IMG/VR virus record: IMGVR_UViG_3300033145_003233
Location: 186,001 to 250,000 of that record
Strand: one strand, 5' to 3'
DNA: 64,000 nucleotides
Positions 8,448 through 56,448 of this stretch are shown here, piece by piece. The stretch's first letter is position 1, and the number at the start of each line of letters is the position of its first letter. Position numbers and translations under genes: made by a program. Below the pieces are notes generated by a model. The model made no database searches. It had not been told where the DNA came from and saw only the letters and a program-made list of their open reading frames with translations.

Positions 8448-8458
8448 ATTATTGTTCC

Positions 8459-8992
8459 TTACATATTTTCTATATCTTCTGCATCATTCAATCTCTGCCA
8501 AAACTCATATTCAAGTTTATGCATTGACCATTGAAAAGCTTGTATCAAACATGGTTTGGGAGCAGAGAATAAATCATCTTTCTTCATTTTTCTAATTGCT
8601 GCTATGGCATCCTTTTGAATTGCCTCGCCAACATATTTCCCTCTTATTTCTTCTATACACCCTTCTTTAATTTCCGCAAGTGTATGAATTTCTCCCTTGG
8701 GGTCTGGGTAATCAGAGAATGCCATTTGAGCATCTACTCTTTTCTTGACTATTTTTCCAGTCTCGTTAGTATAGACATTATAGGCTGTTCCTTCTTTTGG
8801 CACAAAGCCATATCTTTTTTTGCAGGTTTTTTGACTCTGACGACTTGATCCATGAGAGGTATATTCTAACGATGCTCCTGTACCAAAGCAGACGCATCCA
8901 TGGAATATCCTTATACCTTTTTCTACATTTTTCCATACTCTCACAGTTTCTATGTCACTATCTCTCGTTACAAATACGTCAAATTCTTTCAT
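8459..8992 (-). CDS. Hypothetical protein, paralog family B (FDV..TRD / HGC / GTAYNVYT / FSDYP)
   Basis: Motifs shared with 9014, 9571 and 14931. Confidence 0.8.
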   Translation of the reverse strand: MKEFDVFVTRDSDIETVRVWKNVEKGIRIFHGCVCFGTGASLEYTSHGSSRQSQKTCKKRYGFVPKEGTAYNVYTNETGKIVKKRVDAQMAFSDYPDPKGEIHTLAEIKEGCIEEIRGKYVGEAIQKDAIAAIRKMKKDDLFSAPKPCLIQAFQWSMHKLEYEFWQRLNDAEDIENM

Positions 8993-37713: not shown

Positions 37714-38118
37714 TTAACTATCACCATCTTCTCTGAAATTGTATTCATCTGCTTTTTTATTATGTTCTACTGCTCGTTGATTTAACCATTCTGCCAGCTC
37801 TTTACGTTTTTCAACGGACAACGGAACGCCCTCTGCATTATGTATAAGCACTGATGGAAGAACATTCTCCGGCATCTTCTGCATCACAAATGGCTCTTCA
37901 ATTAATCTTCTTAATTGCAATTGCATCATAGCATCTGAGTCTAATCCCAGAGCATAAACTATTGCCCAAAACCATTCCATATCATCTGAGGGAGGGGCAT
38001 AGCCCTGTTCTATATCAGATAATTCGGAAGGTGGCATCTTTATGGTATCTGCAAATTTTCTTAAGCCCATCCCTGCCTTATGTAATCGCAAATCTTTTAA
38101 CAGTTGACCAAAAAACAT
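37714..38118 (-). CDS. XRE-family HTH protein
   Basis: FGQLLKDLRL...GLRKFADTIKMPPSELSDIEQG..PP. Confidence 0.8.
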   Translation of the reverse strand: MFFGQLLKDLRLHKAGMGLRKFADTIKMPPSELSDIEQGYAPPSDDMEWFWAIVYALGLDSDAMMQLQLRRLIEEPFVMQKMPENVLPSVLIHNAEGVPLSVEKRKELAEWLNQRAVEHNKKADEYNFREDGDS

Positions 38119-38119
38119 T

Positions 38120-38773
38120 TTATATCTCCAAAACTATTGGTTCTTTGTTCATCCTATATTGCTCATCTACCAAAGAACAATTAACAAACTTAATACCTTC
38201 ATGTTCTTCGACTCCATACCCATCATGATTATGTCCGAAAATAGCTATTTTAGGTTTTATCTTAAGTATCCTTTTTAACAAGGACACAGAACCTATCTGT
38301 CTAGAGCGACCATTATATTTAACTGTGTCCATAATACCATAAGGAGGACTATGACATACTAAAATATCAGTATCGTCTGGGATATTTTCCCAATGAAGTT
38401 TTATTCTGTCAGAATTTTTATTGAATGCCCAATTATTAAAAGGCAACTGCCAAGGAGTCCCATAAATCTTCTGCCCCATTAACTCAATGCTCTCATCTTC
38501 AAGATAATGAAAATTAGCATTCATTTTAGGAACTCTCTTTTTATCCGTCTCCCATATCCAGTCATGATTACCAGCAACAACCACACACTCCTTAACAGGT
38601 TGATCTACAAGCCAATACCGAAAATCTACACTTAACCATTCAGCTTGTTGCTCTATGGATAAATAAGCCTCATGATAAGCAGGGCACAGATCCCCTGCCA
38701 CCAAAAGCAAGTCTGCCTCTGGTACAGGGAATTTTAAATTACCATGCATATCTGCAATACACGCTATCTTCAT
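38120..38773 (-). CDS. Calcineurin-like metallophosphoesterase
   Basis: DMHG, AGD, GNHD, HSPP, GHNH. Confidence 0.92.
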   Translation of the reverse strand: MKIACIADMHGNLKFPVPEADLLLVAGDLCPAYHEAYLSIEQQAEWLSVDFRYWLVDQPVKECVVVAGNHDWIWETDKKRVPKMNANFHYLEDESIELMGQKIYGTPWQLPFNNWAFNKNSDRIKLHWENIPDDTDILVCHSPPYGIMDTVKYNGRSRQIGSVSLLKRILKIKPKIAIFGHNHDGYGVEEHEGIKFVNCSLVDEQYRMNKEPIVLEI

Positions 38774-39537
38774 TATTTTTTCGCAGGTTGTATCGTAAGA
38801 TCAACCATCCCTACAAAATATTTTTGTTTTTTACTAAGCACTTTTTGAAGGGCATCATCCACAGTTTTAGACAATTTATCAAAAACTGGATAAACCCTTC
38901 TAGAAGGAGAATCATATTCGAACATAACAAAGCGTGCTCCTCTCCTTCTTCCTTCCAGAGTCCACTTCTCTCTTTGTTTCTGCCTAACAGGTTCAAACAA
39001 ATCTGAAAAAAATTCAAAAAATCCCATCTTTGTCTCCTAATTTAATTGCAGTTTATGTTCTTTCATCCATTCTTTGGACCCAGCTATTTCTTCTGGTTGT
39101 AACCATTTAGCTTCTTCGGTTAAAAACCTATCATTTTTATGACTAATAATAAATCTAGCCGCGTCTTTCAGATTACCAGCATAAATTACAGAACCTTGTT
39201 TAAACTTAGAGCGATTATAACGTTTATCCGTTTCTATAATATCTTCGCTCATCTCTGTTTTAACTACTAGCCAGTGTCCTGATCTTCTCTTTTCATAAGG
39301 GAAATAACGAGTCTTTCCCCAAGGTATTCCATATAGCCCATACCGAATGTCTATATCTTTTGTGAACTTTTCTGCTTCTATATATCCATCAAGGGGATAT
39401 TTATTACCCCCTACATCCATCCATTCTTCATCAACATATACCAGCATAAAAACATAAAAACCTTTTACTTTCATAATCCGTACCTGCCACAACAAGTTGC
39501 CATTACTAAATAGCATTATATACGAATTATCTTTCAC
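38773..39537 (-). CDS. Two hypothetical ORFs (38773-39027, 39037-39537)
   Basis: ORF track. Confidence 0.6.
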
Positions 39538-39546
39538 TTACAAGAG

Positions 39547-39586
39547 AAAAAAGTGTGCAAAATAGATAATTATTCTGCACACTTTT
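39547..39586 (-). terminator. Hairpin terminator after the RNA ligase gene
   Basis: AAAAGTGTGCAGAAT / ATTTTGCACACTTTT followed by T-tract. Confidence 0.7.
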
Positions 39587-39597
39587 CAGGTCAATTC

Positions 39598-40812
39598 TTA
39601 CAAATCATCAGCAAATCTAGTAGCCGCAGATGATGGTAAATATCCTAGTAAAACATTTGCCTTTGGTCTGAAAGCAGTAAACATTTTCCTACGAGAAAGT
39701 GAACTAAAATCATCAAGTGCTGCATGAAACTTATTTTTCCTCATTAAGAAAATATATTTTATTGACTCATTAAACTTCCTTTTACCAAAAGGTTGAGGAC
39801 GTTGAGCTAGATAAAGTCCTAACTCTTTATCAGACATATGTTCAGTAAGGTCATACATATCCTCTACCTCAGAAACAAATGACTCCAACTTTTGAGAAAG
39901 AATCCAAACGATAGTATCGAAGTCTTTTTCTAGTTCCTCAGGAAGTTCCTTTTTCACTTCGTCCAAATCGTCACCATTCAATAATAAATCCCAGATAGCT
40001 AATGGAGTTACCTTTGAAATCAGTTTATGGATACGAACATACTCTGCACCTTTTACCTTTATACGAACACCGCTCTCAAAACGGATAACATATCCTTCTT
40101 CATTTTGAGTTAGAGTCTCAGCCTTTTCCACAATAGATGTCATGTCGTCAAAATCATGCTTAGGCACAAATGCTACTCTTAACTTCTTGCTTGCCTCTAC
40201 TTGAAGATCTTCATAAGAGTACTCTACACCTTGAGGATCAAAAATAGCCAACAACACTAACCCTGAGAAATTGTAATTTACAACTATTTTATTCTCTGGA
40301 TAAATTATCTCGAACAGATAAGTGTTCTTTTTCCAAGCTGACCGAAGGACAACATGATTGCTGATTATCCATTCCTCAGCCCACTTAGCTTGTTCAGATG
40401 TAAAAGAGCCACACGTAGCAACTCTCCATGCTCCCTCGTAGTAGAACATGATTCCAAGAGAACCATCCATTTTTTCAGTAACAGTGAATTCTGATTCTAT
40501 AATAGATGCAGAACCTGATTCTATTTCACCGAAATTAAAAAACTTCATGAAAGGAGAAGCAACTACCACCTTATTTTTAAGGTCCAGAATTAGACCTCTT
40601 GACATTAGAGTAAAGACATTCCAGTTTCTTCCAGCAACACAGTCAATAGAATACTTGAACAAAGCCAAATGTGGAAAATCTGGATGGTAATTAACATTGA
40701 TATTTCCTCTGTTAATTTCCTCGAACAGTCCATCAACAAGGGCTTGAAACTCCATTACTCTAGATGGATGTTTCTTTCCATGTTTTAATAATATTTCCAT
40801 TACGTCATTCAT
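39598..40812 (-). CDS. RNA ligase, T4 Rnl1-like
   Basis: SPFMKFFN, TEKMDGSLG (motif I), EGYVIRF (motif IV), KVKGAEY (motif V). Confidence 0.9.
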   Translation of the reverse strand: MNDVMEILLKHGKKHPSRVMEFQALVDGLFEEINRGNINVNYHPDFPHLALFKYSIDCVAGRNWNVFTLMSRGLILDLKNKVVVASPFMKFFNFGEIESGSASIIESEFTVTEKMDGSLGIMFYYEGAWRVATCGSFTSEQAKWAEEWIISNHVVLRSAWKKNTYLFEIIYPENKIVVNYNFSGLVLLAIFDPQGVEYSYEDLQVEASKKLRVAFVPKHDFDDMTSIVEKAETLTQNEEGYVIRFESGVRIKVKGAEYVRIHKLISKVTPLAIWDLLLNGDDLDEVKKELPEELEKDFDTIVWILSQKLESFVSEVEDMYDLTEHMSDKELGLYLAQRPQPFGKRKFNESIKYIFLMRKNKFHAALDDFSSLSRRKMFTAFRPKANVLLGYLPSSAATRFADDL

Positions 40813-40836
40813 AATAACACCTTAGAAAATACCAAT

Positions 40837-40866
40837 AAAAAAAGATGCGGTTAAAAAGCCGCATCT
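40837..40866 (-). terminator. Intrinsic terminator
   Basis: AGATGCGG-N8-CCGCATCT followed by T-tract. Confidence 0.75.
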
Positions 40867-40905
40867 CTATCCTCTACTCCAGTGGGTTATAGGTTATAGC
40901 TTTTT

Positions 40906-41235
40906 CTATCTCGGGCTTCGACAGATATAGCGACATTTCTCTTTATAAACTTTCCAGAAAGACGTTCTATCCTTCCTGTTAAATTCACCCTTAACGAGAG
41001 CACGCTTAAAAGCGATTTTCCTGCCTATTACATCATTAGGCTGATCCTTGCAATGCTGCTTAGCTGTTCCCAACCCAACTGCATCAGTCACACGTCTGTT
41101 ATTATCTGGATCTAATGCATAAATGTTACAACTTATAATCGACACTTTTTTGCCATTTTCTCCAGGCCTCGCAGAAGCACAAAGCGAACGGCAGAAAGAA
41201 ACCGCATACGTCTTATTTCCAACATTGACCTTCAT
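40906..41235 (-). CDS. Conserved phage hypothetical protein
   Basis: G.A..H.KD.....GRKIAFKRAL pattern. Confidence 0.6.
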   Translation of the reverse strand: MKVNVGNKTYAVSFCRSLCASARPGENGKKVSIISCNIYALDPDNNRRVTDAVGLGTAKQHCKDQPNDVIGRKIAFKRALVKGEFNRKDRTSFWKVYKEKCRYICRSPR

Positions 41236-41283
41236 CTTACACTCCTTAAATTATTCTACATCATTATCAATTATTAACCAATT

Positions 41284-41320
41284 ATACTATGGCTGAGAAA
41301 AAACATTTGTCTGGAAAATT
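41284..41320 (-). promoter_or_regulatory. Box promoter TTTTCCAGACA-N18-TAGTAT
   Basis: CAGACA at 41313-41308. Confidence 0.7.
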
Positions 41321-41372
41321 AATTATTCCCAAAATACTACACCAACAAATCTACATTTATACTCTAAAAATC

Positions 41373-41963
41373 CTACCCTGCTACTTTAACAATATCGGTA
41401 TTATACTTGTCAAATAGAATTAAGGCTTCTTTATAATTTTCATAATAAGCCATTTCTTGAGGAGTATGACCGTTATTGTCTCTTTGGTCTCTGTATTCTT
41501 TTACTTTGATAAATCTCTTAACCAAACGGAGATTTCTCATTGCTATAGCTTCGTGGAGAGGAGTCCTGCCATATCGAGTAGAGAGTTTTTCTTTTCTTGC
41601 TTCTACTTCTTCTGGGGTATCAGGCTCTACAATACCTTTGTCTATTAGTTCTTGCTGTTTACGTTGAAGCCTTTCTTCAACCTCTATGAGGTACTGATTT
41701 CTCTTTCTCCCTTTGATCTCCGGATGTTGCTCATAATTCTTTTGATGGTGTAACGAAAGAATCTCTTTTATTTTTACAGATGGTTCTTTACTGCTGAAAA
41801 TTATATCCGCTTCCTGCTCTAACAAACTTCCATCATCCTCGTATTCTACTTCATCAAATATCCCCGCTCCCTCCAAATCTTCCATAATTTTATTAAGGTG
41901 TTCTCTTTTTATGTCGTTCCTTAATAAGATATGTAGCATCCTATTTTTTTCCCGTACAGACAT
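41373..41963 (-). CDS. Ankyrin-repeat protein
   Basis: YGRTPLHEA...LVKRFI...RDNNGHTPQEMA. Confidence 0.8.
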   Translation of the reverse strand: MSVREKNRMLHILLRNDIKREHLNKIMEDLEGAGIFDEVEYEDDGSLLEQEADIIFSSKEPSVKIKEILSLHHQKNYEQHPEIKGRKRNQYLIEVEERLQRKQQELIDKGIVEPDTPEEVEARKEKLSTRYGRTPLHEAIAMRNLRLVKRFIKVKEYRDQRDNNGHTPQEMAYYENYKEALILFDKYNTDIVKVAG

Positions 41964-42021
41964 ACCAATTCTCCTATTAATAGGTCATTTATTAAATTCT
42001 TCAAAGAACCGTTATAACAAG

Positions 42022-42055
42022 ATAAGGGTAATGGGAATAATCCCATCACCCTTAT
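42022..42055 (-). terminator. 15-bp hairpin after the Ro60 gene (terminator or processing site)
   Basis: ATAAGGGTGATGGGA-TTAT-TCCCATTACCCTTAT, one G-U pair. Confidence 0.65.
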
Positions 42056-42068
42056 TGAAAATATTAAC

Positions 42069-43823
42069 TTACAATTTTCCCGCAGCGAACTCAGAAAGAA
42101 TACGAGGCACATTAGAATCTAGCCCTGCTATGTCCATCATTCCTGCATCACTAGGATCAGCAATAGTGAACTTATTTGCTGCAAAAGCCATAACAACAAG
42201 TTTCGCATTCTTGTTAAACTTCTTTCTGTATCTCTTCAATGCCTCAAACGGATGCGCATATCCAGTATTTGTCTCATTATCTGTTAAAACAACAAACACA
42301 TCGACATCCATTTCGTTATCCATGGCATATTGCATAGGCAAAGAACAATCCGTACTACTAAACGGAAGATTAGAAGTCCTTCTGATAACAGTATCAAGAC
42401 TATCTTTCGCTGTGATATTCAACGGAACGAAAGTACGTGAGAAACCCATCATCGCATAATTCTTTTCCGTCCTAGCAATAGTCATAGCCACAACTGATGC
42501 TGCTTCACGAGGAACTATTCCGCTTGGATGATCAAAAGAACCCCAACCACTAGAAGCCATTGAAGCACTAACATCAATTCCTAACAAGAATTTCTTTCCT
42601 GTTGGTTCAACATAGTTGAACGCCTTATAAAAAGCCTCTTCCAAAGCATCTTTAATAGCAGACACAGGACTCCATGAAGTTCTCATACCACTACCCTTGC
42701 TATAAGTCTTAAGGGCCAACATAATCGTCATTGGATGGAGACGACTCTTCTTCAATGCTTCCTCATTTGTAATCTTACCAATAGCCAATGAAGTCTCATC
42801 ACTCAATGACTTCAAAAGTCCTGAAGAAGTCATTTGACCCAAGTTACGAATTAAAGCACCTATAGGCATCTTAGGAAGCAATGCTTTTTGTACCTTTTTT
42901 TCATTCCTGAATTGAGGAGGAATAGACTCTCTTGTTAGACCATAAGCTGTAACCAACTTCACCACTTCATTAATGTCAGTTGAGTTCATACTTTGCTCAT
43001 GTGCCCAAATATACTTCAGAGTTCCATCTTTCAATGCCTCTAGTTCAGAAACTAAAAGACCAGGACTTTCTTGAGTTTTTCCAGAAGCCTCAGAATCTTT
43101 TGCTCTCTTTACAAGAACCTCTTCGCTTGTTACTCCATGTGTCGCATAATGGAAAATAGTAGCATGCTCATCAGAAGGAGTAGTCAATGCCCTACCATTT
43201 CTAGCAGGCTTTCCATCAGCAGTAGGGCGAGAGATTCTGCACATACGAAGCAGATCCCCATGAGTCAACCTTTGCCCACCAACTGAACGACCAGGGTACT
43301 TGCAAATTTGATATGCTAATTTAACAGCATCTTTTTCAGTGTACCATCTTCCCATTGCTCTAAGCATACCCTTAGCCTTATGCCCTTCTTTCAATGAAAG
43401 AACAGCAAGCACCCACTCAAAAAGAGCAGTTGAAAAACGAGCAACCTTAGGCATCATCTTATTAGCGTATGCTCTTGTCTTGTCGTCTCCGTGAACACTG
43501 CAAACTGCCAATGCAAAAATAGCAGGAGCATTCTTAACAGCACGACCTTCATCGCTAATTTGAACGATAGTATCTACCGTACGCTTACTATCTAATTTCA
43601 GACAACGCAAAATGACATCATAGTTTTCCATAGTCAGTTCGCGAGCTGAAGCATAATAAGTGCCATTCTCATTCCCTATAATTAAGAAACGATTTAGCCT
43701 CGTCCAGTCATCAGCCGTAAACACAAAACCACCTGAACGGTTTTCGACTTGCGTACTCTTAGCTCTTTTTCTTTGGTTAGTTTGAGGGTTTGCTACAATA
43801 TTAGCATAATTTTTCTCAGCCAT
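42069..43823 (-). CDS. rsr: Ro60/Rsr TROVE-domain RNA-binding protein (TROVE plus vWA)
   Basis: GGFVF..DDW.RL.RFLIIG...GTYY; LLGIDVSASM (MIDAS); TDCSLPM; FVVLTDNET; DPSDAGMMDIAGLD. Confidence 0.95.
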   Translation of the reverse strand: MAEKNYANIVANPQTNQRKRAKSTQVENRSGGFVFTADDWTRLNRFLIIGNENGTYYASARELTMENYDVILRCLKLDSKRTVDTIVQISDEGRAVKNAPAIFALAVCSVHGDDKTRAYANKMMPKVARFSTALFEWVLAVLSLKEGHKAKGMLRAMGRWYTEKDAVKLAYQICKYPGRSVGGQRLTHGDLLRMCRISRPTADGKPARNGRALTTPSDEHATIFHYATHGVTSEEVLVKRAKDSEASGKTQESPGLLVSELEALKDGTLKYIWAHEQSMNSTDINEVVKLVTAYGLTRESIPPQFRNEKKVQKALLPKMPIGALIRNLGQMTSSGLLKSLSDETSLAIGKITNEEALKKSRLHPMTIMLALKTYSKGSGMRTSWSPVSAIKDALEEAFYKAFNYVEPTGKKFLLGIDVSASMASSGWGSFDHPSGIVPREAASVVAMTIARTEKNYAMMGFSRTFVPLNITAKDSLDTVIRRTSNLPFSSTDCSLPMQYAMDNEMDVDVFVVLTDNETNTGYAHPFEALKRYRKKFNKNAKLVVMAFAANKFTIADPSDAGMMDIAGLDSNVPRILSEFAAGKL

Positions 43824-43887
43824 TTCTTTCTCCTTTTTCTTATCAACCTAATTTAATTTTAGATATATCGATATCAACACATTAGCA

Positions 43888-43915
43888 ATTATACAATTTT
43901 CTACTTTTTTGTCAA
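43888..43915 (-). promoter_or_regulatory. sigma70 promoter of the Ro60 gene, overlapped by an inverted repeat (43898-43922)
   Basis: TTGACA-16-TATAAT; TTTCTACTT-N7-AAGTAGAAA. Confidence 0.75.
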
Positions 43916-44069
43916 GTAGAAAGTTCATTTTATTTTGAAAAAACTTAAAAAATCCTCTATTTTCTTCATAATTTTTTATAACCCCCTATCAAATAAGGAG
44001 TTAAGAAATCAACTTTTTTTACACTATTTTCATATATCGGCTAAAAAACTTTAAAACTTTAATCTTTTT

Positions 44070-45719
44070 TTACTCTCTTTTTCCAAATCCGAAAGCAGAA
44101 CTAGTTTCTCCAACTCCGAATTTCTCCATAGTTTCTATGATCTCATCGGCCCATTTAATATCAATTCTTTTGACTTTTCTTCGACTACTGATATGCTTAA
44201 GATTCAAGCTATTAATAAATTCCTGAGCCTCAGCCCCTGTCCATCCATCAGTTTTAGAAACAATATGATCCAATGTCTTTTTATTTGTTTTCCATTGTTT
44301 TAATCTGTCTTTAAACATCCTTTGCCTAAGTTCTTCACAAAGAGCAGGCACTTCCACTACTCTATCAAAACGACCTGGCCTGTTCTTCAAGGCACTCTCA
44401 ATAATTCTTAATCTATTAGTCGTCCCTATGGTAACAGAATTTTTAATAGAATTCACTCCATCAAGAATATTCATCAATGCACCGAGAGAAATCACATCTC
44501 CACCCTTCTCTCTATCTTGACTAAACAAGTCTAAATCCTCTAAGATTATGATACAAGGAGACAAGAAATCTGCTAGCTTATATAAGGCCTTAATAGAAGT
44601 TATAGCTTTATAATTATTCTCTGCTAATATCTCAGGAGTAATCCATATAACAGTATAATCAGGAACTAGATTACAAATGATATTACCTATAGTGGTCTTA
44701 CCAGTCCCTGCTCTCCCGTGTAAAATTATTCCTCTTTTAGTTATTCCGCAAGCATTGTATTTTTTAACATTTTTAACAAAACCAAAAATCTCTAAATCAA
44801 AGAGATCTTTAATACTCTCTGGATAATAATAATTGTCCCATGTATATGAATCTTTGATCTCTACCTCTGAGAAAGATGCTGATATCATATTAACATCTTT
44901 TAATTTTGCTCCTCTTAGACAATTATGTTTTTTAGCAAACTCTTGCAAATCATTAATAATATTTTTTGAGCAACCCGTATCAGTACTAAAACATGTTATA
45001 GAAGCTCCTCCTCGTTCCCCATCAAAATACAAGAAAAAAGCTACATTTTCTTGTTTCTTCCCCTTCACCTTTTCAAAATATAAAAATCCCGTAGTGGTAA
45101 ATGTGGTTTCTTTACCTTTAACACTCCATGGATTCTTTTCTGGAGGAATAGAATTACCATGATCATCAAAATTCAATTCTCCTGCAAAGCTAAAACCCTC
45201 TTCCTCCATAAATTTAACCATACACTCCATTAAAATCAAAGTGATAAGAGGATGTGCTTGATAGGGATGATTTTTAATATCATTAACACTTGTAACTCCT
45301 AGAAATCTACAAAGAATTCTATAATCAATAGAACGAATAAAATCTATTTTAATCTGATCTGCAAATTTAACCGCTACTAACTCTTTATATCTTTGTTCTG
45401 CTATATCCTCTGCTATAGATTGAAGAGGACGTGGAACACCTCCACTTATAGTCGCTGTTTGAGTCTCAAACATGCGATCATCGCACGGAACAGGCATACA
45501 TTCATCACCATCATCATCAAAATTTAACTCTTCAATTACTTGTTTTACTATTTCTGTTGAAGTTGAAGCACGATGTACCGGGCTTTTTACAATAGATTGA
45601 TCTTTAATCATACGAGTATTACCTTCCATTAATATAAGTTTTTCATAATCTTCCTCCCGGATATCAAAAAATCTACACCAGAATGCTTTTAATTCTCTTT
45701 GTACCTTATTTCTTTTCAC
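44070..45719 (-). CDS. Classical-clade AAA+ ATPase with a long N-terminal domain
   Basis: GRAGTGKT (Walker A), IIILEDLD (Walker B), TTNR...ALKNRPGRFDR (SRH). Confidence 0.92.
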   Translation of the reverse strand: MKRNKVQRELKAFWCRFFDIREEDYEKLILMEGNTRMIKDQSIVKSPVHRASTSTEIVKQVIEELNFDDDGDECMPVPCDDRMFETQTATISGGVPRPLQSIAEDIAEQRYKELVAVKFADQIKIDFIRSIDYRILCRFLGVTSVNDIKNHPYQAHPLITLILMECMVKFMEEEGFSFAGELNFDDHGNSIPPEKNPWSVKGKETTFTTTGFLYFEKVKGKKQENVAFFLYFDGERGGASITCFSTDTGCSKNIINDLQEFAKKHNCLRGAKLKDVNMISASFSEVEIKDSYTWDNYYYPESIKDLFDLEIFGFVKNVKKYNACGITKRGIILHGRAGTGKTTIGNIICNLVPDYTVIWITPEILAENNYKAITSIKALYKLADFLSPCIIILEDLDLFSQDREKGGDVISLGALMNILDGVNSIKNSVTIGTTNRLRIIESALKNRPGRFDRVVEVPALCEELRQRMFKDRLKQWKTNKKTLDHIVSKTDGWTGAEAQEFINSLNLKHISSRRKVKRIDIKWADEIIETMEKFGVGETSSAFGFGKRE

Positions 45720-45737
45720 TTTTCAACTATAAAAATT

Positions 45738-46724
45738 TTAATAATCACTAGTAGCGGTTAAGTGAAAAGCTCCTTCACAATCTTTCCTTCTTAACCACAA
45801 GTAAGTATCTACATCACACATACTACAACCTGCTAATTCAGCTATTTCCTTACAAACCATAATAGAAGTCGCTCTTATCTCACATTCTTCCAATGACCCG
45901 CGAGGAATCAATTCGTTATTAGATATTTTTGCTTGGAGAAGAGGAGAGTAATAGAGACAACCCAAGTGGGATAGCATTTTCGGTATTTGGTAATCAGCGG
46001 GGACAGGGACTTTTTCTATTTCATCTTTAAACCATTGAACTCTTCTATATAGCATCATAACTAATAGAAATATCCTTTTAAGAAACATATCTTCTCCATA
46101 ACCAGGATAGGTTGTAATAATAAGTTGGATAAATTTTTCTACGCCTATTTTCCCCGACTTTATTTTATCCACTACTGTTTCCGAAGTTTCTTCTATTCTC
46201 CAAGAATGTCTAAGAGATTTATAACCATAGCAACCCATTCCCGCTGCTATTTCTCGAAGATGTCTAATTCTATCAGTTAAATTGGGGAATCTATACAAAG
46301 TCAACTTGCTTACAAAATTACCAATTACATCTTGGCAAAGATTAGGAAGACGATCATGCCCAAATATTTCGGATCTTTCTTCTGCAAAAGCTTGATCCAG
46401 CAATTCATACATCAATGTTGCCCCAGCATTATTGGGCCTACAATCATGAACACCATACCAATATTGATAGTTAATAGAGCCAGCTATCAACTCATAAAGA
46501 AACAACTCTTGATCTAAGCGATTCTCCTTGGGGGGAGTTTCTCTATCAGAAGAAATAAGACACTTTGGATATCCAAGCCAAAAATCCTTACCGTCCTTTA
46601 ATCCTTCTTTAATTAAAGCTGCTGTTTCTGTTATCCCTTTACAAGTCATCCAAACATGAGAAGGATTCTTTGTAAATTTCTCAGAAAGTTCCATTACTCC
46701 ACTAATTAATTTATTCTTCATCAC
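45738..46724 (-). CDS. Queuosine salvage protein (DUF2419 / QNG1-like Q-5'-phosphate N-glycosylase)
   Basis: PADYQIPKML..LG.L.YS..L...I....GS.EECEIRA.SI; D..LW; FHLT.T..Y C-terminus. Confidence 0.85.
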   Translation of the reverse strand: MMKNKLISGVMELSEKFTKNPSHVWMTCKGITETAALIKEGLKDGKDFWLGYPKCLISSDRETPPKENRLDQELFLYELIAGSINYQYWYGVHDCRPNNAGATLMYELLDQAFAEERSEIFGHDRLPNLCQDVIGNFVSKLTLYRFPNLTDRIRHLREIAAGMGCYGYKSLRHSWRIEETSETVVDKIKSGKIGVEKFIQLIITTYPGYGEDMFLKRIFLLVMMLYRRVQWFKDEIEKVPVPADYQIPKMLSHLGCLYYSPLLQAKISNNELIPRGSLEECEIRATSIMVCKEIAELAGCSMCDVDTYLWLRRKDCEGAFHLTATSDY

Positions 46725-48307: not shown

Positions 48308-49252
48308 TTACAAAAGATAATAAGCCGAAGATTTTAGATCTTCTATCTTATTCCCACCAATGTAGGAAATAGCACTTTGCAAATCCTCTTTTAATTCTCC
48401 CATTAACCTCTCCATATTCCCCCTAAATTTAATCAAAATTTTCTTTCCCTCTATATTGTTGTATTCTTGTTTGTTATATTTAGAAGCACTACCATAATAT
48501 TCCTTGTACATATTATCTTCTATTTCAATTATATTCCCAGCGGATTGCTCATATCCTGCGAATAAAGATCCAGCCATAACCATATCTGCACCGCAAGCAA
48601 GGGCTTTTGCTATATCCCCATGTTCAACCACCCCTCCATCAGCTATAATAATAACTTTCTCTCTAGCCCTTACACAATCTAATATTGTACTGACCATTGG
48701 ACGATGCACACCTGTTTTATTCTTTGTAATACAAACGCTTCCTCCAGCAATCCCGCATTTAATAGCATCTACACCCCACCCCTCAATCTCTTTCACAGCA
48801 TCTCCTGTAGCCACATTACCAATAATTAAGAAAGTTTCCGGAAAGTTGTCTTTAATAAAAGTTGTCATCTGTCTAGCTTCATCTGACCACGCATTGGCAA
48901 CATCTATAGTAATATAATCAGGTATTTGGTTGTCTTTTAATAGCCCTTCTAATTGATTTTTAGATCCCCAACTAATACCTACACTTACAGAAGTTAAATA
49001 TTCATGCTGTTTCATAGTAGTTATAAAAAATCCATAATTTACATCGAAACGATGCATTGTATAAAACCAGTTGTGTTTAGCAAAAAATTGACAAGTTTTC
49101 ATATCTACAACGCTCTTCATATTAGCAGGATATATAGGCATATTAAAAATATGCTTACCAAGTTGAACAGAAGTATCTATATGACCACGACTACTCACGA
49201 TGCATTTCTTGGGTATTAATGATATATCAGAATAACTTAATTGTTTTTCCAT
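48308..49252 (-). CDS. guaC: GMP reductase
   Basis: PANM, ITIDVAN, GNVAT, KCGIAGGSVCIT, IADGG...GDIAKA, YYGSAS, EGKK. Confidence 0.92.
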   Translation of the reverse strand: MEKQLSYSDISLIPKKCIVSSRGHIDTSVQLGKHIFNMPIYPANMKSVVDMKTCQFFAKHNWFYTMHRFDVNYGFFITTMKQHEYLTSVSVGISWGSKNQLEGLLKDNQIPDYITIDVANAWSDEARQMTTFIKDNFPETFLIIGNVATGDAVKEIEGWGVDAIKCGIAGGSVCITKNKTGVHRPMVSTILDCVRAREKVIIIADGGVVEHGDIAKALACGADMVMAGSLFAGYEQSAGNIIEIEDNMYKEYYGSASKYNKQEYNNIEGKKILIKFRGNMERLMGELKEDLQSAISYIGGNKIEDLKSSAYYLL

Positions 49253-49920
49253 GCTATTTTCTTACAAAGTTTAATAAAATATTCTTGTTCGAATTTCTGC
49301 TTCATATAATTAACATCCTTATGGACCCATTGAACATTACCATTTATATACCCCCTTGTATTATCTATCCTATCTAAAGAAGCCGTTGCCCGATGGCGAT
49401 TCGTGAGGGCGAGTTCTATCGATAAACCGGATAAAGCACATTTTTTATTCTGGCTTACAAATAAATTCCAGGCATATTTTATAGAGATTTTAAATTTATG
49501 AGATCTTTTAATAGCCCCCCGTTTTATCCCTCCCCACCACTTACCTGTTATCTCCTTATATCCTTTCCAATTTTTATAATTATTTCTATTAACTCTAATC
49601 CAACATCCACAGGATTTGGTATTACCGCTTTTTAATTCATGTGTAGAAAGAATTGTTTCATTGCCACAGGCACACTGGCACTCCCACATTCTTTGACCCT
49701 TATACTTGCCCTTAATTCCATCAAATCTTTTTATAACTATAAGCCTAGTAAAAGTCTGGCCTGCTAATGAATAATTTCTTTTAATTTTATATTTTTCTAA
49801 GTAATTTCTAACCGTACTTTTATGACATCCAATTTCTTTAGCGATCGAATTCATTGTTCTGTTATTTTTGATATATTCCCGTTTTAAATAAGATTGACTA
49901 ATATCATATTTAATCCCCAT
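49237..49920 (-). mobile_element. Free-standing HNH-type homing endonuclease
   Basis: GQTFTRL.V...WECQCACG...L.SG.TKSCGC; CALSG...SLDRIDN..GY..GNVQWV...N.MK. Confidence 0.75.
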
Positions 49921-49993
49921 TTTGATCTCCCCATATAAACAATTCGTATATATATAGTTCTATCAAACCTGCTTTAATCCTTTTTCTACATTC

Positions 49994-50218
49994 TTACGCC
50001 TTCACATCAATATGAGTGATTTCTTCCTTCTTCTCTATCTTCTCTATTAATTTTAATTCATGGATACTCTTCACAAGAAAATATTCCACCTCTCTCAAAG
50101 ATTGTCTTACAGTTGCCATATCTTCATGTCCCTCTAAAGCCTTTCTAATGGCTGTTGTGCTCTCTTTTTTATTCCCCAACTGTTGTAGTAAACTGTACTT
50201 TTGATTATCAGTTATCAT
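49994..50218 (-). CDS. Hypothetical protein
   Basis: ORF track. Confidence 0.55.
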   Translation of the reverse strand: MITDNQKYSLLQQLGNKKESTTAIRKALEGHEDMATVRQSLREVEYFLVKSIHELKLIEKIEKKEEITHIDVKA

Positions 50219-51075
50219 TCATACACTTCCCCGGTCCACACCATATACTCCCTTTCATCGACAGGGAGCTTAAAACTATAAAATAATTCTTTTAAACATT
50301 TTTCACATATATCAAAGAGATAGGCAGTACAATCAGAAAGAATGGGAGAATGATAAAAGCCTTTTGCCTGAGCACCTATAAGACCATAAAAACTTTCTGG
50401 TCCCTCATGCTCTATTGCCATAGAACATGATTCTCCGCACATATTGCACAAACATGTTTTATGTATTTCATGTGGTATTTTCTCCGCTATCTCATCGTCC
50501 CATTTAGACACTTTAGTTTTTAAAGTTGCTATATATGGCAAATCTCTTAATTCTCCATCTAGGTCTAAACCACCCCCAACTAAGAAATCTTTAGTTGTAA
50601 CCTTATGACCTACAAATAGTGGCTGCATCTTATAAGCATGCTCTATCTCCCTCTCTAGCATCACACAATATTCTATAGTTAATGGAGATAACTGTTCAAC
50701 AATGCCATGAAGTATATATAAGGTTTTACCCGTATCATAAATATCATCGATAATTAGAACATGCTTACCTGCAATTGTCTTTTTTATATAATCTGACAAT
50801 TCTACATCAACCACTCCAGTAGATTTTGTTCCTTCATAACTACTAGCTTTAACATGGTGAGTACTAGAATTAGCATGAAACTTTGGTGGTAATTTAATTT
50901 CTACATCTCTTGCGAAACGGATAGCTCCTTCTCTTATCACAAGAATCACCACTTGATCTCCCCCACCCTTCACATTTGGATAATGAGCAACTATTTCATT
51001 TGCAATAGTGGATGAGATTCTTGTTAGGTCATTACTATGAAGTATAACATCTTTAATAACATTTAGTCTTTGCAT
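50215..51075 (-). CDS. hpt: Hypoxanthine-guanine phosphoribosyltransferase fused to a C-terminal Cys-rich domain
   Basis: SSYEG..STG.V; VLIIDDIYDTGKTL (PRPP loop); FLVGGGLD....RDLPYI; then CNMCG...FDICEKC. Confidence 0.85.
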   Translation of the reverse strand: MQRLNVIKDVILHSNDLTRISSTIANEIVAHYPNVKGGGDQVVILVIREGAIRFARDVEIKLPPKFHANSSTHHVKASSYEGTKSTGVVDVELSDYIKKTIAGKHVLIIDDIYDTGKTLYILHGIVEQLSPLTIEYCVMLEREIEHAYKMQPLFVGHKVTTKDFLVGGGLDLDGELRDLPYIATLKTKVSKWDDEIAEKIPHEIHKTCLCNMCGESCSMAIEHEGPESFYGLIGAQAKGFYHSPILSDCTAYLFDICEKCLKELFYSFKLPVDEREYMVWTGEVYE

Positions 51076-51076
51076 T

Positions 51077-52820
51077 TTACCCCCAATAAGTATAAATCAT
51101 AGGTCTTAGTTCTTGGATTGTCTTATAAAAATCTTTAAAAATATCTAGCCAATAAATATGTAATACAATTGAACCGGCAATTACAGGACGATAATATGTT
51201 TTATAATAATCCAATTTATCTCCTGATAATAAGGGTGGAGTCTTTTCTGTCCATATTCCTATTGCCATGTTATACTCCCCTCCATTCATGTAATCAGGAT
51301 ACCCTTCTTTTCCATATTTTGGACTACCTGGAATATGAATTATTCCCTGATAAGGCCATATACCACATCTATGAGTCAAATCCTTAACGCTATCCTGAGA
51401 TTCATCGCATTCATAATAGTCCATGATATCATCATACCTACCCCAGTCCTGATGAGTTAAATGACGAAACATCATAACATTGGACATCCCATATTCTCCA
51501 CGAACAACAGGTCTTATAAATTTGGACTTATCTATTTTCCCATCTTCTATCTTTCCAAAAATAAAAGTCATGTCCAATGAGCTAGAAGATCTACCTTCTT
51601 CTCTCCCATCAACCTTATCAACTATATTTTTACATTCTTCTTTATTATTTTGAACCCAGTTTATAAAACCTTCAAAGTCTCCCTCCTTCTTGTAAAAAAT
51701 ACTTGGCTTAAATGCTTCCACATTTAACCTATGGTCAATAGGAATATCCTTCTCATCACACTTAATATCTGTTAATCCCCATCCTATTACTTTATGAATT
51801 CTTGTTCCCACTTAACTACTCCTTACTTTCTTTTTGGGGTTCAGGATGATCTCTCATCTCTTCAAAAGCCCACCTTATTTGATGAAAGGCAGATTCTACC
51901 CATGGATAAAGACCTATATAAGAATCACCGCGACCAAATTCTTCCCACTTAGCTATAAATCCCCCGTCCCTACTATCTTGATATGTTGTTTTAAAATTAG
52001 TTTTTTTATACCACCTCAAATCTGGTCTGTGTGGGCCGTATTTTTGCCCCGGCAAATTATCACTGAAATTTTCGACTAACCATCGTGCATGCAAAATTGC
52101 CATTCTCTTCCCTCTCTTTTTAAACTCCCTTTCTTCTTGTTTGTCCCATTTGTCTTCTGGCTTTAGGTATCTATCCCAATATCGATAAATATACCAGTTA
52201 GGAGGAGTTTTTTCTAACCCCGGAGTTACATAGAATTTCTTTACCACTATATAGTTAAGACTTTGTGATTCCAGAGCAAAGACATGAAGATTCTGTACTA
52301 ACTCAGGGTAATTTTTGCAAACTACCTTTTTGGAGGGAAGATAAAAGATATGATTATCCATATCATTATATTCATATTGATTATTCTCGGTATATTTATA
52401 TTCTACCAATTTTTGATAAATAAAATCCATGTCCTCAAAATTCTCTTCAAATTCCTCTGCCACAAAGTTTTCACAAACCCACTCTAAATAAAGTTGCCCT
52501 ATCCATCTATCTTTCTCTCCAAAATCAAAGTACTTAAGAGCTTTTGCTATGATCTTAGGAGCACTTATGCTACTCCCACCACTCTCCTCTTGTGCTTCTG
52601 GATAATATCTTTTGCACCATCTTAAAAGAGCTTTCGTGGCTTTTGCTTCATGTATCCTTTCTCTCTCCAAATAATCCATTCCCATTATCTTTTCTATTTC
52701 TGTTTTTTGCTTTTTAGTTAGCTTTTTCTTTTTAGGGACTTTCTTTTTCCCTTTCCTCCATGCCACCATCTTATTCTTTGCTTTCTTTACTTTCTTTTTT
52801 TTCTTTGTCATATTATTCAC
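51077..52820 (-). CDS. Two hypothetical proteins (51077-51811, 51816-52820)
   Basis: Long ORFs that fit the gene packing. Confidence 0.7.
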
Positions 52821-55332: not shown

Positions 55333-56448
55333 TTATTCGTCAGAGAAGTCTACTACTTCCCCCTTCGCCTCTTTTTTATTCTTCATAAGAAGATAATCTT
55401 CATTAAGCATTTTTAGAATAGCCCTACCGCAAGACCATTCTTCTCTTTCTTTTAGAGAGCAAATAACTATACCTTCTCTAATATGGTCAGCACCATTTCT
55501 TTTAGCGAGAAAAGAAGGGCCTGTAGAAAGGCCTTTCATCAAATTCATATTAAATGACCCCTCGATAATAAGAGGAACCATAGGGACAGAAAAAGCCTTA
55601 CATAGATTATTAAATAGTTCCCAATCAACATACTTACCATCTATCTTCAATGAAAATGCCACAAAGTTAAGAGAATTAGGTTTTCCATAATGCATAGATT
55701 TATGTCCACCTCTTACTCTTCCATACACTTCTCCGTATAGAGTAGCACTTTTCTTGCAGCCATAACGAGGATCATTACCTAAAGCCGAAAGAAGATATTT
55801 AACTGACTCAAGAGTAAAGGGATACCAGTAGCTATTAGAAAGCATTTCTTCATCTGTAGGCATTTTTCTCTTAACCCTATGAGAACCACCTTTCCACTCT
55901 AGTTCTCCTTCCTCAGATTTGAAGAAGCCTATCCTACAATTAGTCCCATCTATTTTTTCTGTAACACAAACTTCCTCTCCCTTTTCAAAAATATCAGGGA
56001 AATTTCTGATATTCTCTATGTCTGTATATTTAGTAAACAGAGGGTCATCGGGAGCAGCATCTCCAGCCATAGCTCTTAGAGGTGGTTCGTATTTAGTAAT
56101 TCCATAATGTTCAGCTACATCTGTCCCTACTTCCCAATTTTCTTCGTTATTTATAATCAGTCCGTAAGACATCGCCCCACGAAGTCTGGCACACCTAACG
56201 CGATTGTGAAGTTTACCTCCGAGATAGTTACCCACTCCAAGTCTCTCTACAAGTTCGAGAGGAAGCACAGCATCAACAGGGATATAAACAACAATATCTC
56301 CTACTTTATAATCTCCCTTGCCAACTATGCACTCCCATCCCTTGACAACGGCAATTTCTAGCCTGTCAGCATTCTCGTGCGAGAGAACTTCTTTTATATC
56401 ACAAACTTCTACTATTAAACTACTGCTCATCCTTCTTCCTTTCTTCAT
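55333..56448 (-). CDS. RNA ligase, DRB0094 family
   Basis: N-terminal H.NADRLE...GW...V.KG; TEKIDGTN, REGIVI, KMLNEDYL. Confidence 0.9.
   Translation of the reverse strand: MKKGRRMSSSLIVEVCDIKEVLSHENADRLEIAVVKGWECIVGKGDYKVGDIVVYIPVDAVLPLELVERLGVGNYLGGKLHNRVRCARLRGAMSYGLIINNEENWEVGTDVAEHYGITKYEPPLRAMAGDAAPDDPLFTKYTDIENIRNFPDIFEKGEEVCVTEKIDGTNCRIGFFKSEEGELEWKGGSHRVKRKMPTDEEMLSNSYWYPFTLESVKYLLSALGNDPRYGCKKSATLYGEVYGRVRGGHKSMHYGKPNSLNFVAFSLKIDGKYVDWELFNNLCKAFSVPMVPLIIEGSFNMNLMKGLSTGPSFLAKRNGADHIREGIVICSLKEREEWSCGRAILKMLNEDYLLMKNKKEAKGEVVDFSDE

What the first reader, a model, noticed from the sequence alone, without database searches (positions are those of the whole stretch)
38120..45719. Ro60, Rnl1 ligase, phosphoesterase, ankyrin and AAA+ neighbourhood: an RNA repair module without RtcB
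Seen: AAA+ ATPase, Ro60, ankyrin protein, a conserved small ORF, Rnl1-like ligase and a metallophosphoesterase within 7.6 kb. Known: bacterial rsr usually sits with Y RNA and rtcB, and T4 repairs PrrC-cut tRNA with Pnkp plus Rnl1. Inference: Ro60 is paired here with an ATP-dependent ligase, with the phosphoesterase as 3'-end healer, to counter host RNA-cleaving defences. No 5' kinase or Y RNA is visible next to rsr.
Basis: partly seen in the sequence, partly recalled or inferred. Interest (0 to 1): 0.65.

Follow-up and report, generated by a model that had tools for sequence, protein, structure and literature searches.

The report
Huge-phage Ro60 and RNA-ligase gene block
A 548-kb phage keeps a Ro60 RNA-binding ring, an intact T4-type RNA ligase and a metal-dependent phosphodiesterase side by side in a gene block shared by its relatives. 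This is probably a variant of the known phage RNA-repair or counter-defence kit, but nothing shows that the parts work together.

Summary
Window 38120-45719 (minus strand) encodes AAA+ ATPase, Ro60 (TROVE+vWA, MIDAS intact), an ankyrin protein, a 109-aa ORF, an Rnl1-family ligase with all catalytic motifs, and a metallophosphoesterase.

The window belongs to a 547,943-bp phage with 29 tRNAs, no RtcB, no recognisable Y RNA and no kinase in the block.

The block is collinear in 11 related huge-phage contigs. Ro60 is missing in 2, Rnl1 in 1 and AAA+ in 1. Only the ankyrin and DUF7666-fold proteins are present in all.

Among 75 distant Ro60-bearing viral loci, only one has an Rnl1 within 10 kb.

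Ro60 and Rnl1 are each bracketed by promoter- and terminator-like sites, so the block does not look like one operon.

The phosphoesterase is MPPED2/class-III-like and matches PADLOC candidate PDC-S10; it is not Pnkp-like. In relatives it sits beside an ADP-ribosylglycohydrolase.

A Pnk-like kinase and a second, Rnl5-like ligase lie elsewhere in the genome.

TROVE, Rnl1 and calcineurin-like phosphatases were already listed as jumbo-phage RNA-repair parts (PMC7824862).

Verdict: partly supported, a new variant of a known kind, moderate interest.

The parts
44070..45719 (-). AAA+ ATPase, 549 aa. It has one classic-clade (Cdc48/PAN/FtsH-like) AAA domain at residues ~320-530 and an unassigned N-terminal ~300 residues.
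   Evidence: PF00004. PDB Cdc48/p97 hits E 1e-37 to 1e-34. NCBIfam CDC48/PAN and weak IteA. Walker A GTGKT, Walker B ILED and RPGRFD are read in the sequence. Present in 11 of 12 contigs.
43979..44003 (-). Terminator-like hairpin after the AAA+ gene.
   Evidence: Read from the sequence. Conserved in relatives.
43888..43921 (-). Perfect sigma-70-type promoter (TTGACA, 16 nt, TATAAT) for Ro60. A palindrome unique in the genome overlaps the -35 element.
   Evidence: 12 of 12 consensus match. Palindrome unique in the genome. Promoter and 5'UTR box conserved in L006, L007 and L015.
42069..43823 (-). Ro60/Rsr orthologue, 584 aa: TROVE ring plus vWA domain with a complete MIDAS (D417, S419, S421, T491, D515).
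   Evidence: Pfam. NCBIfam Rsr 385 bits. Invariant columns in 45 viral homologues. 35-39% identity to annotated Ro-like proteins of actinophages.
42022..42055 (-). 15-bp hairpin, terminator-like, directly after the Ro60 stop codon.
41373..41963 (-). Ankyrin-repeat protein, 196 aa: about two ANK repeats at the C-terminus and a conserved helical N-terminus.
   Evidence: Ank_2 E 1.6e-5. Invariant GR-PLHEA-A and DNNG-T motifs. Present in 12 of 12 contigs.
40906..41235 (-). Small ORF, 109 aa, function unknown. It is followed by a terminator-like hairpin at 40841-40868.
   Evidence: Weakly conserved (28-42% identity) in L007, L008, L015 and L099. Hairpin.
39598..40812 (-). Rnl1-family ATP-dependent RNA ligase, 404 aa. 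Motif I is K114-x-D-G; E168, E239-G240, K252 and K254 are also conserved. The C-domain is all-helical.
   Evidence: PF09511. T4 Rnl1 2c5u E 1e-13. Invariant residues in 43 homologues. AF2 model pLDDT 94. Foldseek T4 Rnl1 E 2.5e-16, then Trl1 ligase domain.
39515..39587 (-). 17-bp terminator-like hairpin after Rnl1 (39548-39587), then a promoter-like site (39515-39543) ahead of p166.
39037..39474 (-). p166, a 145-aa protein of DUF7666-like fold, function unknown. It follows Rnl1 (or the position Rnl1 occupies) in all 12 contigs.
   Evidence: 33 metagenomic homologues and no Pfam match. AF2 pLDDT 92.8. Foldseek BFVD hit to a DUF7666 protein E 6.7e-9. ESM Atlas TM 0.72. Present in 12 of 12 contigs.
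38773..39027 (-). 84-aa ORF with no detectable family. It occupies the position where relatives carry a second phosphoesterase and/or an ADP-ribosylglycohydrolase.
38120..38773 (-). Metallophosphoesterase, 217 aa, class-III/MPPED2-like. All metal ligands are present (D8, H10, D28, N69, H141, H181, H183), as is H70.
   Evidence: PF00149. MPPED2 3rl4 E 2.7e-26. PADLOC PDC-S10 E 2.5e-68 over the full length. Residues read. Present in 10 of 12 contigs.
37714..38118 (-). HTH (Xre-like) protein, 134 aa, directly downstream of the phosphoesterase.
   Evidence: HTH_3/HTH_31. Found in 10 of 12 contigs.
55333..56448 (-). Second RNA ligase, Rnl5 (Naegleria NgrRnl)-like, with an N-terminal OB domain. It lies outside the finding but joins the block in relatives.
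   Evidence: PF21189 plus PF09414. NgrRnl 5cot E 4.6e-19. It lies 4-6 kb from the phosphoesterase in L096 and L101.

Best explanation
This is a clade-specific accessory block of a huge, tRNA-rich phage that groups RNA-damage-response proteins. The likely working model has four steps.
1. Host anticodon nucleases or other RNases cut tRNA or rRNA.
2. The class-III metallophosphodiesterase opens or removes 2',3'-cyclic or 3'-phosphate ends.
3. A kinase encoded elsewhere (the phage's Pnk-like P-loop kinase, or a host enzyme) phosphorylates the 5'-OH.
4. The Rnl1-type ligase reseals the break.

Ro60 would hold the 3' ends of broken or misfolded RNAs. The AAA+ ATPase, the ankyrin protein and the DUF7666-fold protein are constant companions of unknown role.

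Shown: the genes, their intact catalytic or metal-binding residues, the absence of RtcB, and collinearity in 11 relatives.

Inferred: every enzymatic substrate, any cooperation of Ro60 with the ligase, and the counter-defence purpose.
For: - Domain calls.
- Rnl1 has motifs I, III, IV and V invariant in 43 homologues, and full-length structural matches to T4 Rnl1 and Trl1.
- All phosphoesterase metal ligands are intact.
- Class-III enzymes of this type hydrolyse cyclic nucleotides, and a relative acts on 2',3'-cNMP (PMC10547211, PMC4222275; abstracts seen).
- The Ro60 MIDAS and ring are conserved.
- The genome has 29 tRNAs and a PolyA_pol-family (PF01743) nucleotidyltransferase, the family that includes CCA-adding enzymes, a second Rnl5-like ligase, a Pnk-like kinase, and no RtcB.
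- The block order is kept in 11 related contigs down to 43-50% ligase identity, and the second ligase joins the block in L096 and L101.
- The same parts list is described for jumbo-phage RNA repair (PMC7824862).
Against: - Ro60 and Rnl1 are each bracketed by promoter- and terminator-like sites.
- Ro60 is absent from the block in L097 and L101, and Rnl1 in L008.
- Only 1 of 75 distant Ro60 loci has an Rnl1 within 10 kb. In nine larger Ro60 contigs outside the clade whose Rnl1 passes the Pfam cut-off, the ligase lies about 65-260 kb away.
- The flanking unrelated genes (GMP-reductase-like, Q_salvage, methylase) are collinear too, so the linkage is no tighter than background synteny.
- The phosphoesterase shows no sequence match to Pnkp-type phosphatases. 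It matches a defence-island candidate family (69), sits near an ADP-ribosylglycohydrolase in relatives, and sits among nucleotide-metabolism genes in phage Tunturi_5 (31).
- No kinase lies in the block.
- No Y RNA was found.
Confidence: 0.42

Rival explanations
1. The block is a loose accessory or anti-defence island. The genes are neighbours by descent and act independently. The phosphodiesterase degrades host cyclic-nucleotide or ADP-ribose-derived signals. Rnl1 repairs tRNA on its own pathway with the distant kinase. Ro60 does general RNA quality control or recruits host exonucleases.
For: - Separate promoter- and terminator-like sites.
- Independent loss of Ro60, Rnl1, AAA+, the glycohydrolase and the second phosphoesterase across 12 contigs.
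- Whole-region collinearity that includes unrelated genes.
- No adjacency in distant Ro60 phages. In actinophages Ro60 sits in tRNA arrays, and in Phosso among tail genes.
- The phosphoesterase matches PDC-S10 and MPPED2.
- Homing endonucleases are inserted in the block.
Against: - The order has persisted down to about 45% identity.
- RNA-acting or RNA-damage-related functions are enriched within about 10 kb in L096 and L101: two RNA ligases, an ADP-ribosylglycohydrolase and, in L096 only, Ro60.
Confidence: 0.35
2. The system is centred on NAD+/ADP-ribose. Its core is the glycohydrolase plus phosphoesterase(s), perhaps with p166, which reverse ADP-ribosylation of RNA, DNA or protein and dispose of the released ADP-ribose derivatives. 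The window carries a reduced version that has lost the glycohydrolase.
For: - An ARH3-like glycohydrolase is present in 9 of 12 contigs, next to or one gene from a phosphoesterase.
- Coupling of the glycohydrolase domain with calcineurin-like phosphatases is a described theme (PMC9503650).
- The p166 model gives a run of weak ADP-ribosyltransferase-fold matches, Z 2.6-3.9 (51).
Against: - The window's genome has no glycohydrolase at all, yet it keeps the phosphoesterase and p166.
- The better-supported fold match for p166 is DUF7666, not an ADP-ribosyltransferase.
- There is no KptA in the genome.
Confidence: 0.13
3. The pair is an AAA+ and vWA remodelling pair. The ATPase acts on the Ro60 vWA/MIDAS domain, like MoxR-vWA pairs, to load or release RNA, independently of ligation.
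For: - AAA+ is adjacent to Ro60 in the window and in 9 of the 11 related contigs.
- AAA-domain ORFs also lie beside Ro60 in two distant loci, L031 and L036.
- The MIDAS is intact.
Against: - The ATPase is classic-clade, not MoxR (23, 68).
- A terminator-like hairpin separates the two genes.
- AAA+ persists where Ro60 is absent (L097, L101), and Ro60 persists without AAA+ (L102).
- In L031 and L036 only the AAA domain itself is similar.
Confidence: 0.07

Closest known systems
T4 tRNA repair pathway (Pnkp + Rnl1 against PrrC)
   Same: An Rnl1-family ligase with the same catalytic motifs and a helical C-domain. It is phage-encoded, in a tRNA-rich genome.
   Different: There is no bifunctional Pnkp. 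The only kinase candidate is a stand-alone 177-aa protein 160 kb away, with a weak match to T4 Pnk (E 0.018). The neighbouring phosphoesterase is a binuclear metallophosphoesterase of MPPED2 type, not a HAD phosphatase.
Bacterial rsr-Y RNA-rtcBA operon (Salmonella; PMC7790460)
   Same: Ro60 lies next to an RNA ligase in a presumed RNA-damage response.
   Different: The ligase is ATP-dependent Rnl1 rather than RtcB. There is no RtcB, RtcA or detectable Y RNA in the genome. The genes are not in one operon.
Jumbo-phage RNA-repair repertoire of Iyer et al. 2021 (PMC7824862)
   Same: That survey lists ROT/TROVE in a subset of jumbo phages, Rnl1/Rnl2/RtcB ligases, polynucleotide kinases and occasional calcineurin-like phosphatases as one functional kit.
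   Different: In the passages read, it does not describe this collinear block (AAA+, Ro60, ankyrin, Rnl1, DUF7666-fold protein, glycohydrolase, phosphoesterase), and 'ankyrin' does not occur in its text.
Clostridium thermocellum Pnkp-Hen1 RNA repair
   Same: A binuclear metallophosphoesterase acts as 3'-end healer together with an ATP-dependent ligase.
   Different: The proteins here are separate. The phosphoesterase has no detectable sequence match to the Pnkp phosphatase domain. No Hen1 or fused kinase was seen.
Class-III metallophosphodiesterases (MPPED2, Rv0805, SpdA) and PADLOC candidate PDC-S10
   Same: The best sequence matches of the phosphoesterase, with all metal ligands present.
   Different: Known members act on free cyclic nucleotides. 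An RNA-end substrate is untested for this family.

Membership tests
Rnl1 (T4 RnlA / Trl1 ligase-domain) family | Nucleotidyltransferase motifs I (KxDG), III, IV (EG) and V (KxK) | tested here: met
   K114/D116/G117, E168, G240, K252 and K254 are invariant in 43 homologues, and E239 nearly so. They align to the T4 Rnl1 motifs.
Rnl1 (T4 RnlA / Trl1 ligase-domain) family | Family HMM above threshold | tested here: met
   Pfam PF09511 scores 68.4 bits against a cut-off of 28.3. The NCBIfam T4 RnlA equivalog model scores 66.9 against 242, so the protein is a family member but not a T4 equivalog.
Rnl1 (T4 RnlA / Trl1 ligase-domain) family | All-helical C-terminal domain appended to the nucleotidyltransferase domain | tested here: met
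   In the AF2 model (pLDDT 94) residues 256-379 are helical. Foldseek aligns 384 columns to the 375-aa T4 Rnl1 at E 2.5e-16, followed by Trl1. TM is only about 0.55, probably because of domain orientation.
Rnl1 (T4 RnlA / Trl1 ligase-domain) family | Sealing of tRNA anticodon-loop breaks | not testable with these tools
   Needs a biochemical assay.
Ro60 / Rsr | TROVE ring plus vWA domain with MIDAS | tested here: met
   Pfam TROVE and vWA_Ro60. The DxSxS, T and D residues are invariant.
Ro60 / Rsr | Partner Y RNA encoded nearby | tested here: inconclusive
   No Rfam match in the window, in relatives or in the genome. However, the YrlA model did not pass its own cut-off in any control genome, so sensitivity is poor. 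Extra T-arm-bearing tRNA-like remnants exist in the tRNA array.
rsr-rtcB RNA repair operon | RtcB ligase linked to rsr | tested here: not met
   PF01139 is absent from the 548-kb genome.
Pnkp-type end-healing enzyme | 5' polynucleotide kinase fused to, or adjacent to, the phosphatase | tested here: not met
   None of the ten proteins scanned across 37714-46724 matched a P-loop kinase family. The only AAA_33 kinase is at genome 62 kb.
Pnkp-type end-healing enzyme | Phosphatase domain homologous to the CthPnkp/lambda-phosphatase or T4 HAD type | tested here: not met
   A PDB sequence search at E<=1 returns only MPPED2 plus chance hits. No fold comparison was run.
Class-III metallophosphodiesterase (MPPED2/Rv0805 type) | Sequence similarity plus the complete binuclear metal site | tested here: met
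   MPPED2 E 2.7e-26. D8, H10, D28, N69, H70, H141, H181 and H183 are read. The protein has GHNH where native MPPED2 has GGIH.
PADLOC PDC-S10 (candidate defence gene) | Family HMM match | tested here: met
   E 2.5e-68 over residues 1-216 of a 223-position model. The family is only a candidate, with no tested function.
Classic-clade AAA+ ATPase | Walker A/B, second region of homology, similarity to Cdc48/PAN/FtsH | tested here: met
   Motifs read.
MoxR-vWA chaperone pair | MoxR-family AAA+ next to a vWA protein | tested here: not met
   The best matches are classic AAA proteins. No MoxR, AAA_3 or AAA_5 family is listed.
DUF7666 (PF24703) | Family HMM match | tested here: not met
   None of the 27 p166 homologues matches PF24703 at E<=1.
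DUF7666 (PF24703) | Shared fold | tested here: met
   Foldseek BFVD E 6.7e-9, TM 0.66. ESM Atlas TM 0.70-0.72 to DUF7666 clusters.
KptA/Tpt1 or other ADP-ribosyltransferases (considered for p166) | ADP-ribosyltransferase fold and catalytic residues | tested here: inconclusive
   There are many ART-fold rows, but only at Z 2.6-3.9. No PF01885 in the genome. No R-H-R-R, H-Y-E or R-S-E pattern is evident among the invariant residues.

The most novel reading that the evidence does not exclude
The constant core (AAA+ ATPase, ankyrin protein, DUF7666-fold protein, class-III phosphodiesterase) is an undescribed phage counter-defence machine. Ro60, Rnl1, an Rnl5-like ligase and an ADP-ribosylglycohydrolase plug into it as interchangeable RNA-damage-reversal modules. 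In this reading Ro60 works without a Y RNA and hands damaged tRNA directly to an ATP-dependent ligase.
Probability: 0.15. Interest if true: 0.75.

Novelty: new variant of a known kind. Interest (0 to 1): 0.45.

Why it matters
No function has been shown for any phage-encoded Ro60. In bacteria, Ro60 is tied to RtcB and Y RNA. A clade of huge phages keeps Ro60 beside an ATP-dependent Rnl1 ligase, with no RtcB and no recognisable Y RNA. That gives a concrete, testable case for whether Ro60 can serve 5'-phosphate/3'-OH ligation, or whether it is only a neighbour. It also flags three uncharacterised proteins (AAA+, ankyrin, DUF7666-fold) and a defence-candidate phosphodiesterase family (PDC-S10) as possible conflict factors on the phage side.

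Tried and rejected
- Megablast of the 7.6-kb stretch against cultured phages found no match.
- A close-relative scan with the ligase in viral contigs found nothing, because the pattern scan is too strict.
- Rfam found nothing relevant: gathering threshold on the window, E<=10 on 36-48 kb, the YrlA and Y_RNA models on the genome, and seven related loci.
- A T-arm motif scan found nothing in the window.
- The AAA+/Ro60 intergenic region contains a terminator, a promoter and a conserved 5'UTR box, not an RNA gene.
- An RNAfold z-score survey of intergenic gaps showed nothing striking near Ro60.
- p166 as KptA or another ADP-ribosyltransferase is set aside in favour of DUF7666: the ART-fold matches are weak, and there is no Pfam match.
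- All-against-all clustering of ORFs from 80 Ro60 loci found no neighbour conserved beyond single clades.
- Complex prediction of Ro60 with the ankyrin protein gave no verdict (score 0.00). This is not evidence either way.
- The sequencing-run search listed none, so expression could not be examined.
- The genome search family scan missed the Rnl1 of L006 and L015, so its tallies are lower bounds.


Full report
**What is there**

The window is bases 186001-250000 of a 547,943-bp IMG/VR virus record. GC content is about 35%, and essentially all genes lie on the minus strand. Reading 45719 down to 38120, the ORFs are as follows.
- A 549-aa AAA+ ATPase. It belongs to the classic Cdc48/PAN/FtsH clade and has an unassigned N-terminal half.
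- A 584-aa Ro60/Rsr orthologue, with TROVE and vWA_Ro60 domains and a complete MIDAS.
- A 196-aa protein with about two ankyrin repeats.
- A 109-aa ORF.
- A 404-aa Rnl1-family RNA ligase.
- A 145-aa protein, called p166 here. Its start is most likely at 39474, behind a promoter-like site.
- An 84-aa ORF.
- A 217-aa metallophosphoesterase.

Its negative statements also hold. No P-loop kinase family matched any of the ten proteins scanned across 37714-46724. No Rfam family matches. RtcB is absent from the whole genome.

**State of the enzymes**

*Ligase.* It keeps motif I (K114-x-D-G), E168, E239-G240 and K252/K254. All of these are invariant or nearly so in 43 homologues, and they align to the T4 Rnl1 motifs. 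A confident model (pLDDT 94) matches T4 Rnl1 over its full length (E 2.5e-16) and then the fungal Trl1 ligase domain. It is therefore an Rnl1-family member with the helical C-domain, though not a T4 equivalog by NCBIfam.

*Phosphoesterase.* All binuclear-site residues are present (sequence). Its only solved relative by sequence is MPPED2 (E 2.7e-26). It also matches the PADLOC single-gene defence candidate PDC-S10 over its full length (E 2.5e-68). Enzymes of this class hydrolyse cyclic nucleotides, and one relative acts on 2',3'-cNMP (PMC10547211, PMC4222275; abstracts seen). No similarity to Pnkp-type phosphatases was found.

*p166.* It folds confidently (pLDDT 92.8). Its best-supported resemblance is to DUF7666 proteins: BFVD E 6.7e-9 and Atlas TM about 0.72. 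The family HMM does not detect it. A run of ADP-ribosyltransferase-fold rows at Z 2.6-3.9 is only a weak lead.

**Transcription signals**

- A terminator-like hairpin follows the AAA+ gene.
- A perfect TTGACA-16-TATAAT promoter, overlapped by a palindrome that is unique in the genome, precedes Ro60.
- A 15-bp hairpin follows Ro60.
- Further hairpins follow the 109-aa ORF and Rnl1.
- A promoter-like site precedes p166.

Ro60 and Rnl1 therefore look like separate transcription units rather than one operon.

**Rest of the genome**

- There are 29 tRNA genes, 27 of them in an array that ends 2.5 kb before the window.
- A second RNA ligase of the Naegleria NgrRnl (Rnl5) type lies at window 55333-56448.
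- A PolyA_pol-family (PF01743) nucleotidyltransferase, the family that includes CCA-adding enzymes, is present.
- A 177-aa P-loop kinase aligns along its length, weakly, with the T4 Pnk kinase domain (E 0.018). It lies at 62 kb, directly after an ART-PolyVal ADP-ribosyltransferase.
- No KptA, no 2H phosphoesterase and no ADP-ribosylglycohydrolase were found.
- No YrlA or Y_RNA match was found. The YrlA model is insensitive, because it passed its cut-off in none of the control genomes.
- Four T-arm-bearing tRNA-like remnants lie in the tRNA array. They are untested candidates for a tRNA-like partner RNA.

**Synteny**

Five IMG/VR contigs have Ro60 at 61-74% identity. Six further contigs were reached through ligase homologues at 43-58% identity. 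All carry the same collinear block.

Presence in the block, over the 12 contigs including the window:

| Component | Present | Absent in |
|---|---|---|
| Ankyrin protein | 12/12 | none |
| p166 | 12/12 | none |
| AAA+ | 11/12 | L102 |
| Rnl1 | 11/12 | L008 |
| Ro60 | 10/12 | L097, L101 |
| MPPED2-like phosphoesterase | 10/12 | L015, L099 |
| ARH3-like ADP-ribosylglycohydrolase | 9/12 | window, L008, L097 |
| Second phosphoesterase | 7/12 | window, L007, L096, L101, L102 |

- The tallies for Ro60 and Rnl1 are biased upward by how the contigs were found.
- Rnl1 is absent from the whole 42.7-kb L008 contig.
- The Rnl5-like ligase lies 4-6 kb away in L096 and L101.
- Supporting calls for the glycohydrolase and second phosphoesterase: 37, 104, 109.
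- Homing-endonuclease ORFs sit beside Rnl1 in L006 and L015 and split the AAA+ gene in L097.
- Flanking unrelated genes (GMP-reductase-like, Q_salvage, methylase) are collinear too, so the linkage is not tighter than background synteny.

Outside the clade the linkage disappears.
- Of 75 more distant Ro60-bearing viral loci, one (L025) has an Rnl1 within 10 kb.
- 31 of the 80 Ro60 loci (the 75 distant ones plus the five close relatives) have tRNA genes nearby; none of those 31 is a close relative.
- No neighbour family is shared beyond single clades.
- In cultured phages Ro60 sits in tRNA arrays (Karp, Pumpernickel) or among tail genes (Phosso).
- Rnl1-family genes occur somewhere on at least 13 of 36 large Ro60 contigs. 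In the nine contigs outside the clade whose Rnl1 passes the Pfam cut-off, they lie about 65-260 kb from Ro60.
- Streptomyces phages such as Gilson carry both genes about 12 kb apart.
- The phosphoesterase family occurs in other phages in nucleotide-metabolism contexts (Tunturi_5).

**Interpretation**

The most economical reading is a clade-specific variant of the phage RNA-repair or counter-defence repertoire. That repertoire has already been catalogued for jumbo phages: TROVE, Rnl1/Rnl2/RtcB, kinases and occasional calcineurin-like phosphatases (PMC7824862).

That the ligase repairs RNA is well grounded by family membership. That the phosphoesterase heals 3' ends is possible but not favoured over action on cyclic nucleotides or ADP-ribose products. 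A coupling of the glycohydrolase domain to calcineurin-like phosphatases is a described theme (PMC9503650). That Ro60 cooperates with the ligase rests only on adjacency in one clade, and separate loss and separate transcription signals weaken it.

I put 0.42 on the repair-module model, 0.35 on an island of independent actors, 0.13 on an ADP-ribose-centred core and 0.07 on an AAA+/vWA remodelling pair.

**What could not be done**

- No sequencing run was listed, so expression is unknown.
- The complex prediction of Ro60 with the ankyrin protein gave no verdict and is not evidence.

Noticed in passing
window 55333-56448 (-): A second RNA ligase with an N-terminal OB domain, closest to Naegleria NgrRnl (Rnl5 type). 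In relatives L096 and L101 it lies only 4-6 kb from the phosphoesterase, and in L014 and L015 upstream of the block.
   Followed up: partly
L006:15863-17585, L096:10058-11484, L099-L102: Most relatives carry an ARH3-like ADP-ribosylglycohydrolase, and often a second metallophosphoesterase, between p166 and the MPPED2-like enzyme. The window genome has no glycohydrolase at all.
   Followed up: partly
genome 60.9-62.5 kb (L002:886-1962): A 177-aa P-loop kinase with a weak full-length match to the T4 polynucleotide kinase domain sits directly after an ART-PolyVal ADP-ribosyltransferase.
   Followed up: partly
window 43855-43921 (-): A palindrome unique in the genome (TTCTACTT-N6-AAGTAGAA) overlaps the -35 element of the perfect Ro60 promoter. 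A 5'UTR box (TATATCTAAA..TAATTAGGTTGAT) is conserved in L006, L007 and L015. Together they suggest specific regulation of Ro60.
   Followed up: partly
genome 173145, 173422, 179732, 181800 (- strand; L092): Four T-arm-bearing tRNA-like remnants lie inside the tRNA array and are not called by ARAGORN. One scores 30 bits with the Rfam tRNA model. They are possible degenerate tRNAs or tRNA-like RNAs.
   Followed up: partly
L097:3784-6761; L006:13111-14007; L015:15874-16782: Homing-endonuclease-like ORFs (NUMOD3/TnsA-like, LAGLIDADG) split the AAA+ gene or sit beside Rnl1 in relatives.
   Followed up: no
window 45738-46724 (-): A Q_salvage (queuosine salvage, PF10343) protein lies directly upstream of the AAA+ gene and is conserved in several relatives. 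Its role (tRNA or DNA 7-deazaguanine chemistry) was not examined.
   Followed up: no
window 48308-54128 (-): This stretch holds a GMP-reductase/IMPDH-like protein, a phosphoribosyltransferase-domain protein and a B12-binding radical SAM enzyme. It is a nucleotide or base-modification cluster next to the block.
   Followed up: no
window 61215-62864 (-): A 549-aa protein combines He_PIG Ig domains, a dockerin-like segment and a metallophosphoesterase domain.
   Followed up: no
p166 model, BFVD hits: The DUF7666-like fold of p166 also matches T4-type RIIB proteins and giant-virus proteins named 'ankyrin repeat protein'. This hints that ankyrin repeats and this domain are fused elsewhere.
   Followed up: no
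L036:9069-9868: In a distant Ro60 phage contig, an 800-nt stretch with no ORF of 60 aa or more on either strand lies between an AAA ATPase gene and Ro60. There is no Rfam or tRNA match.
   Followed up: no
L071:128-1804 and 6961-8637: Two Ro60 copies lie in inverted orientation on one 8.8-kb viral contig. This may be an assembly artefact or an inverted repeat.
   Followed up: no
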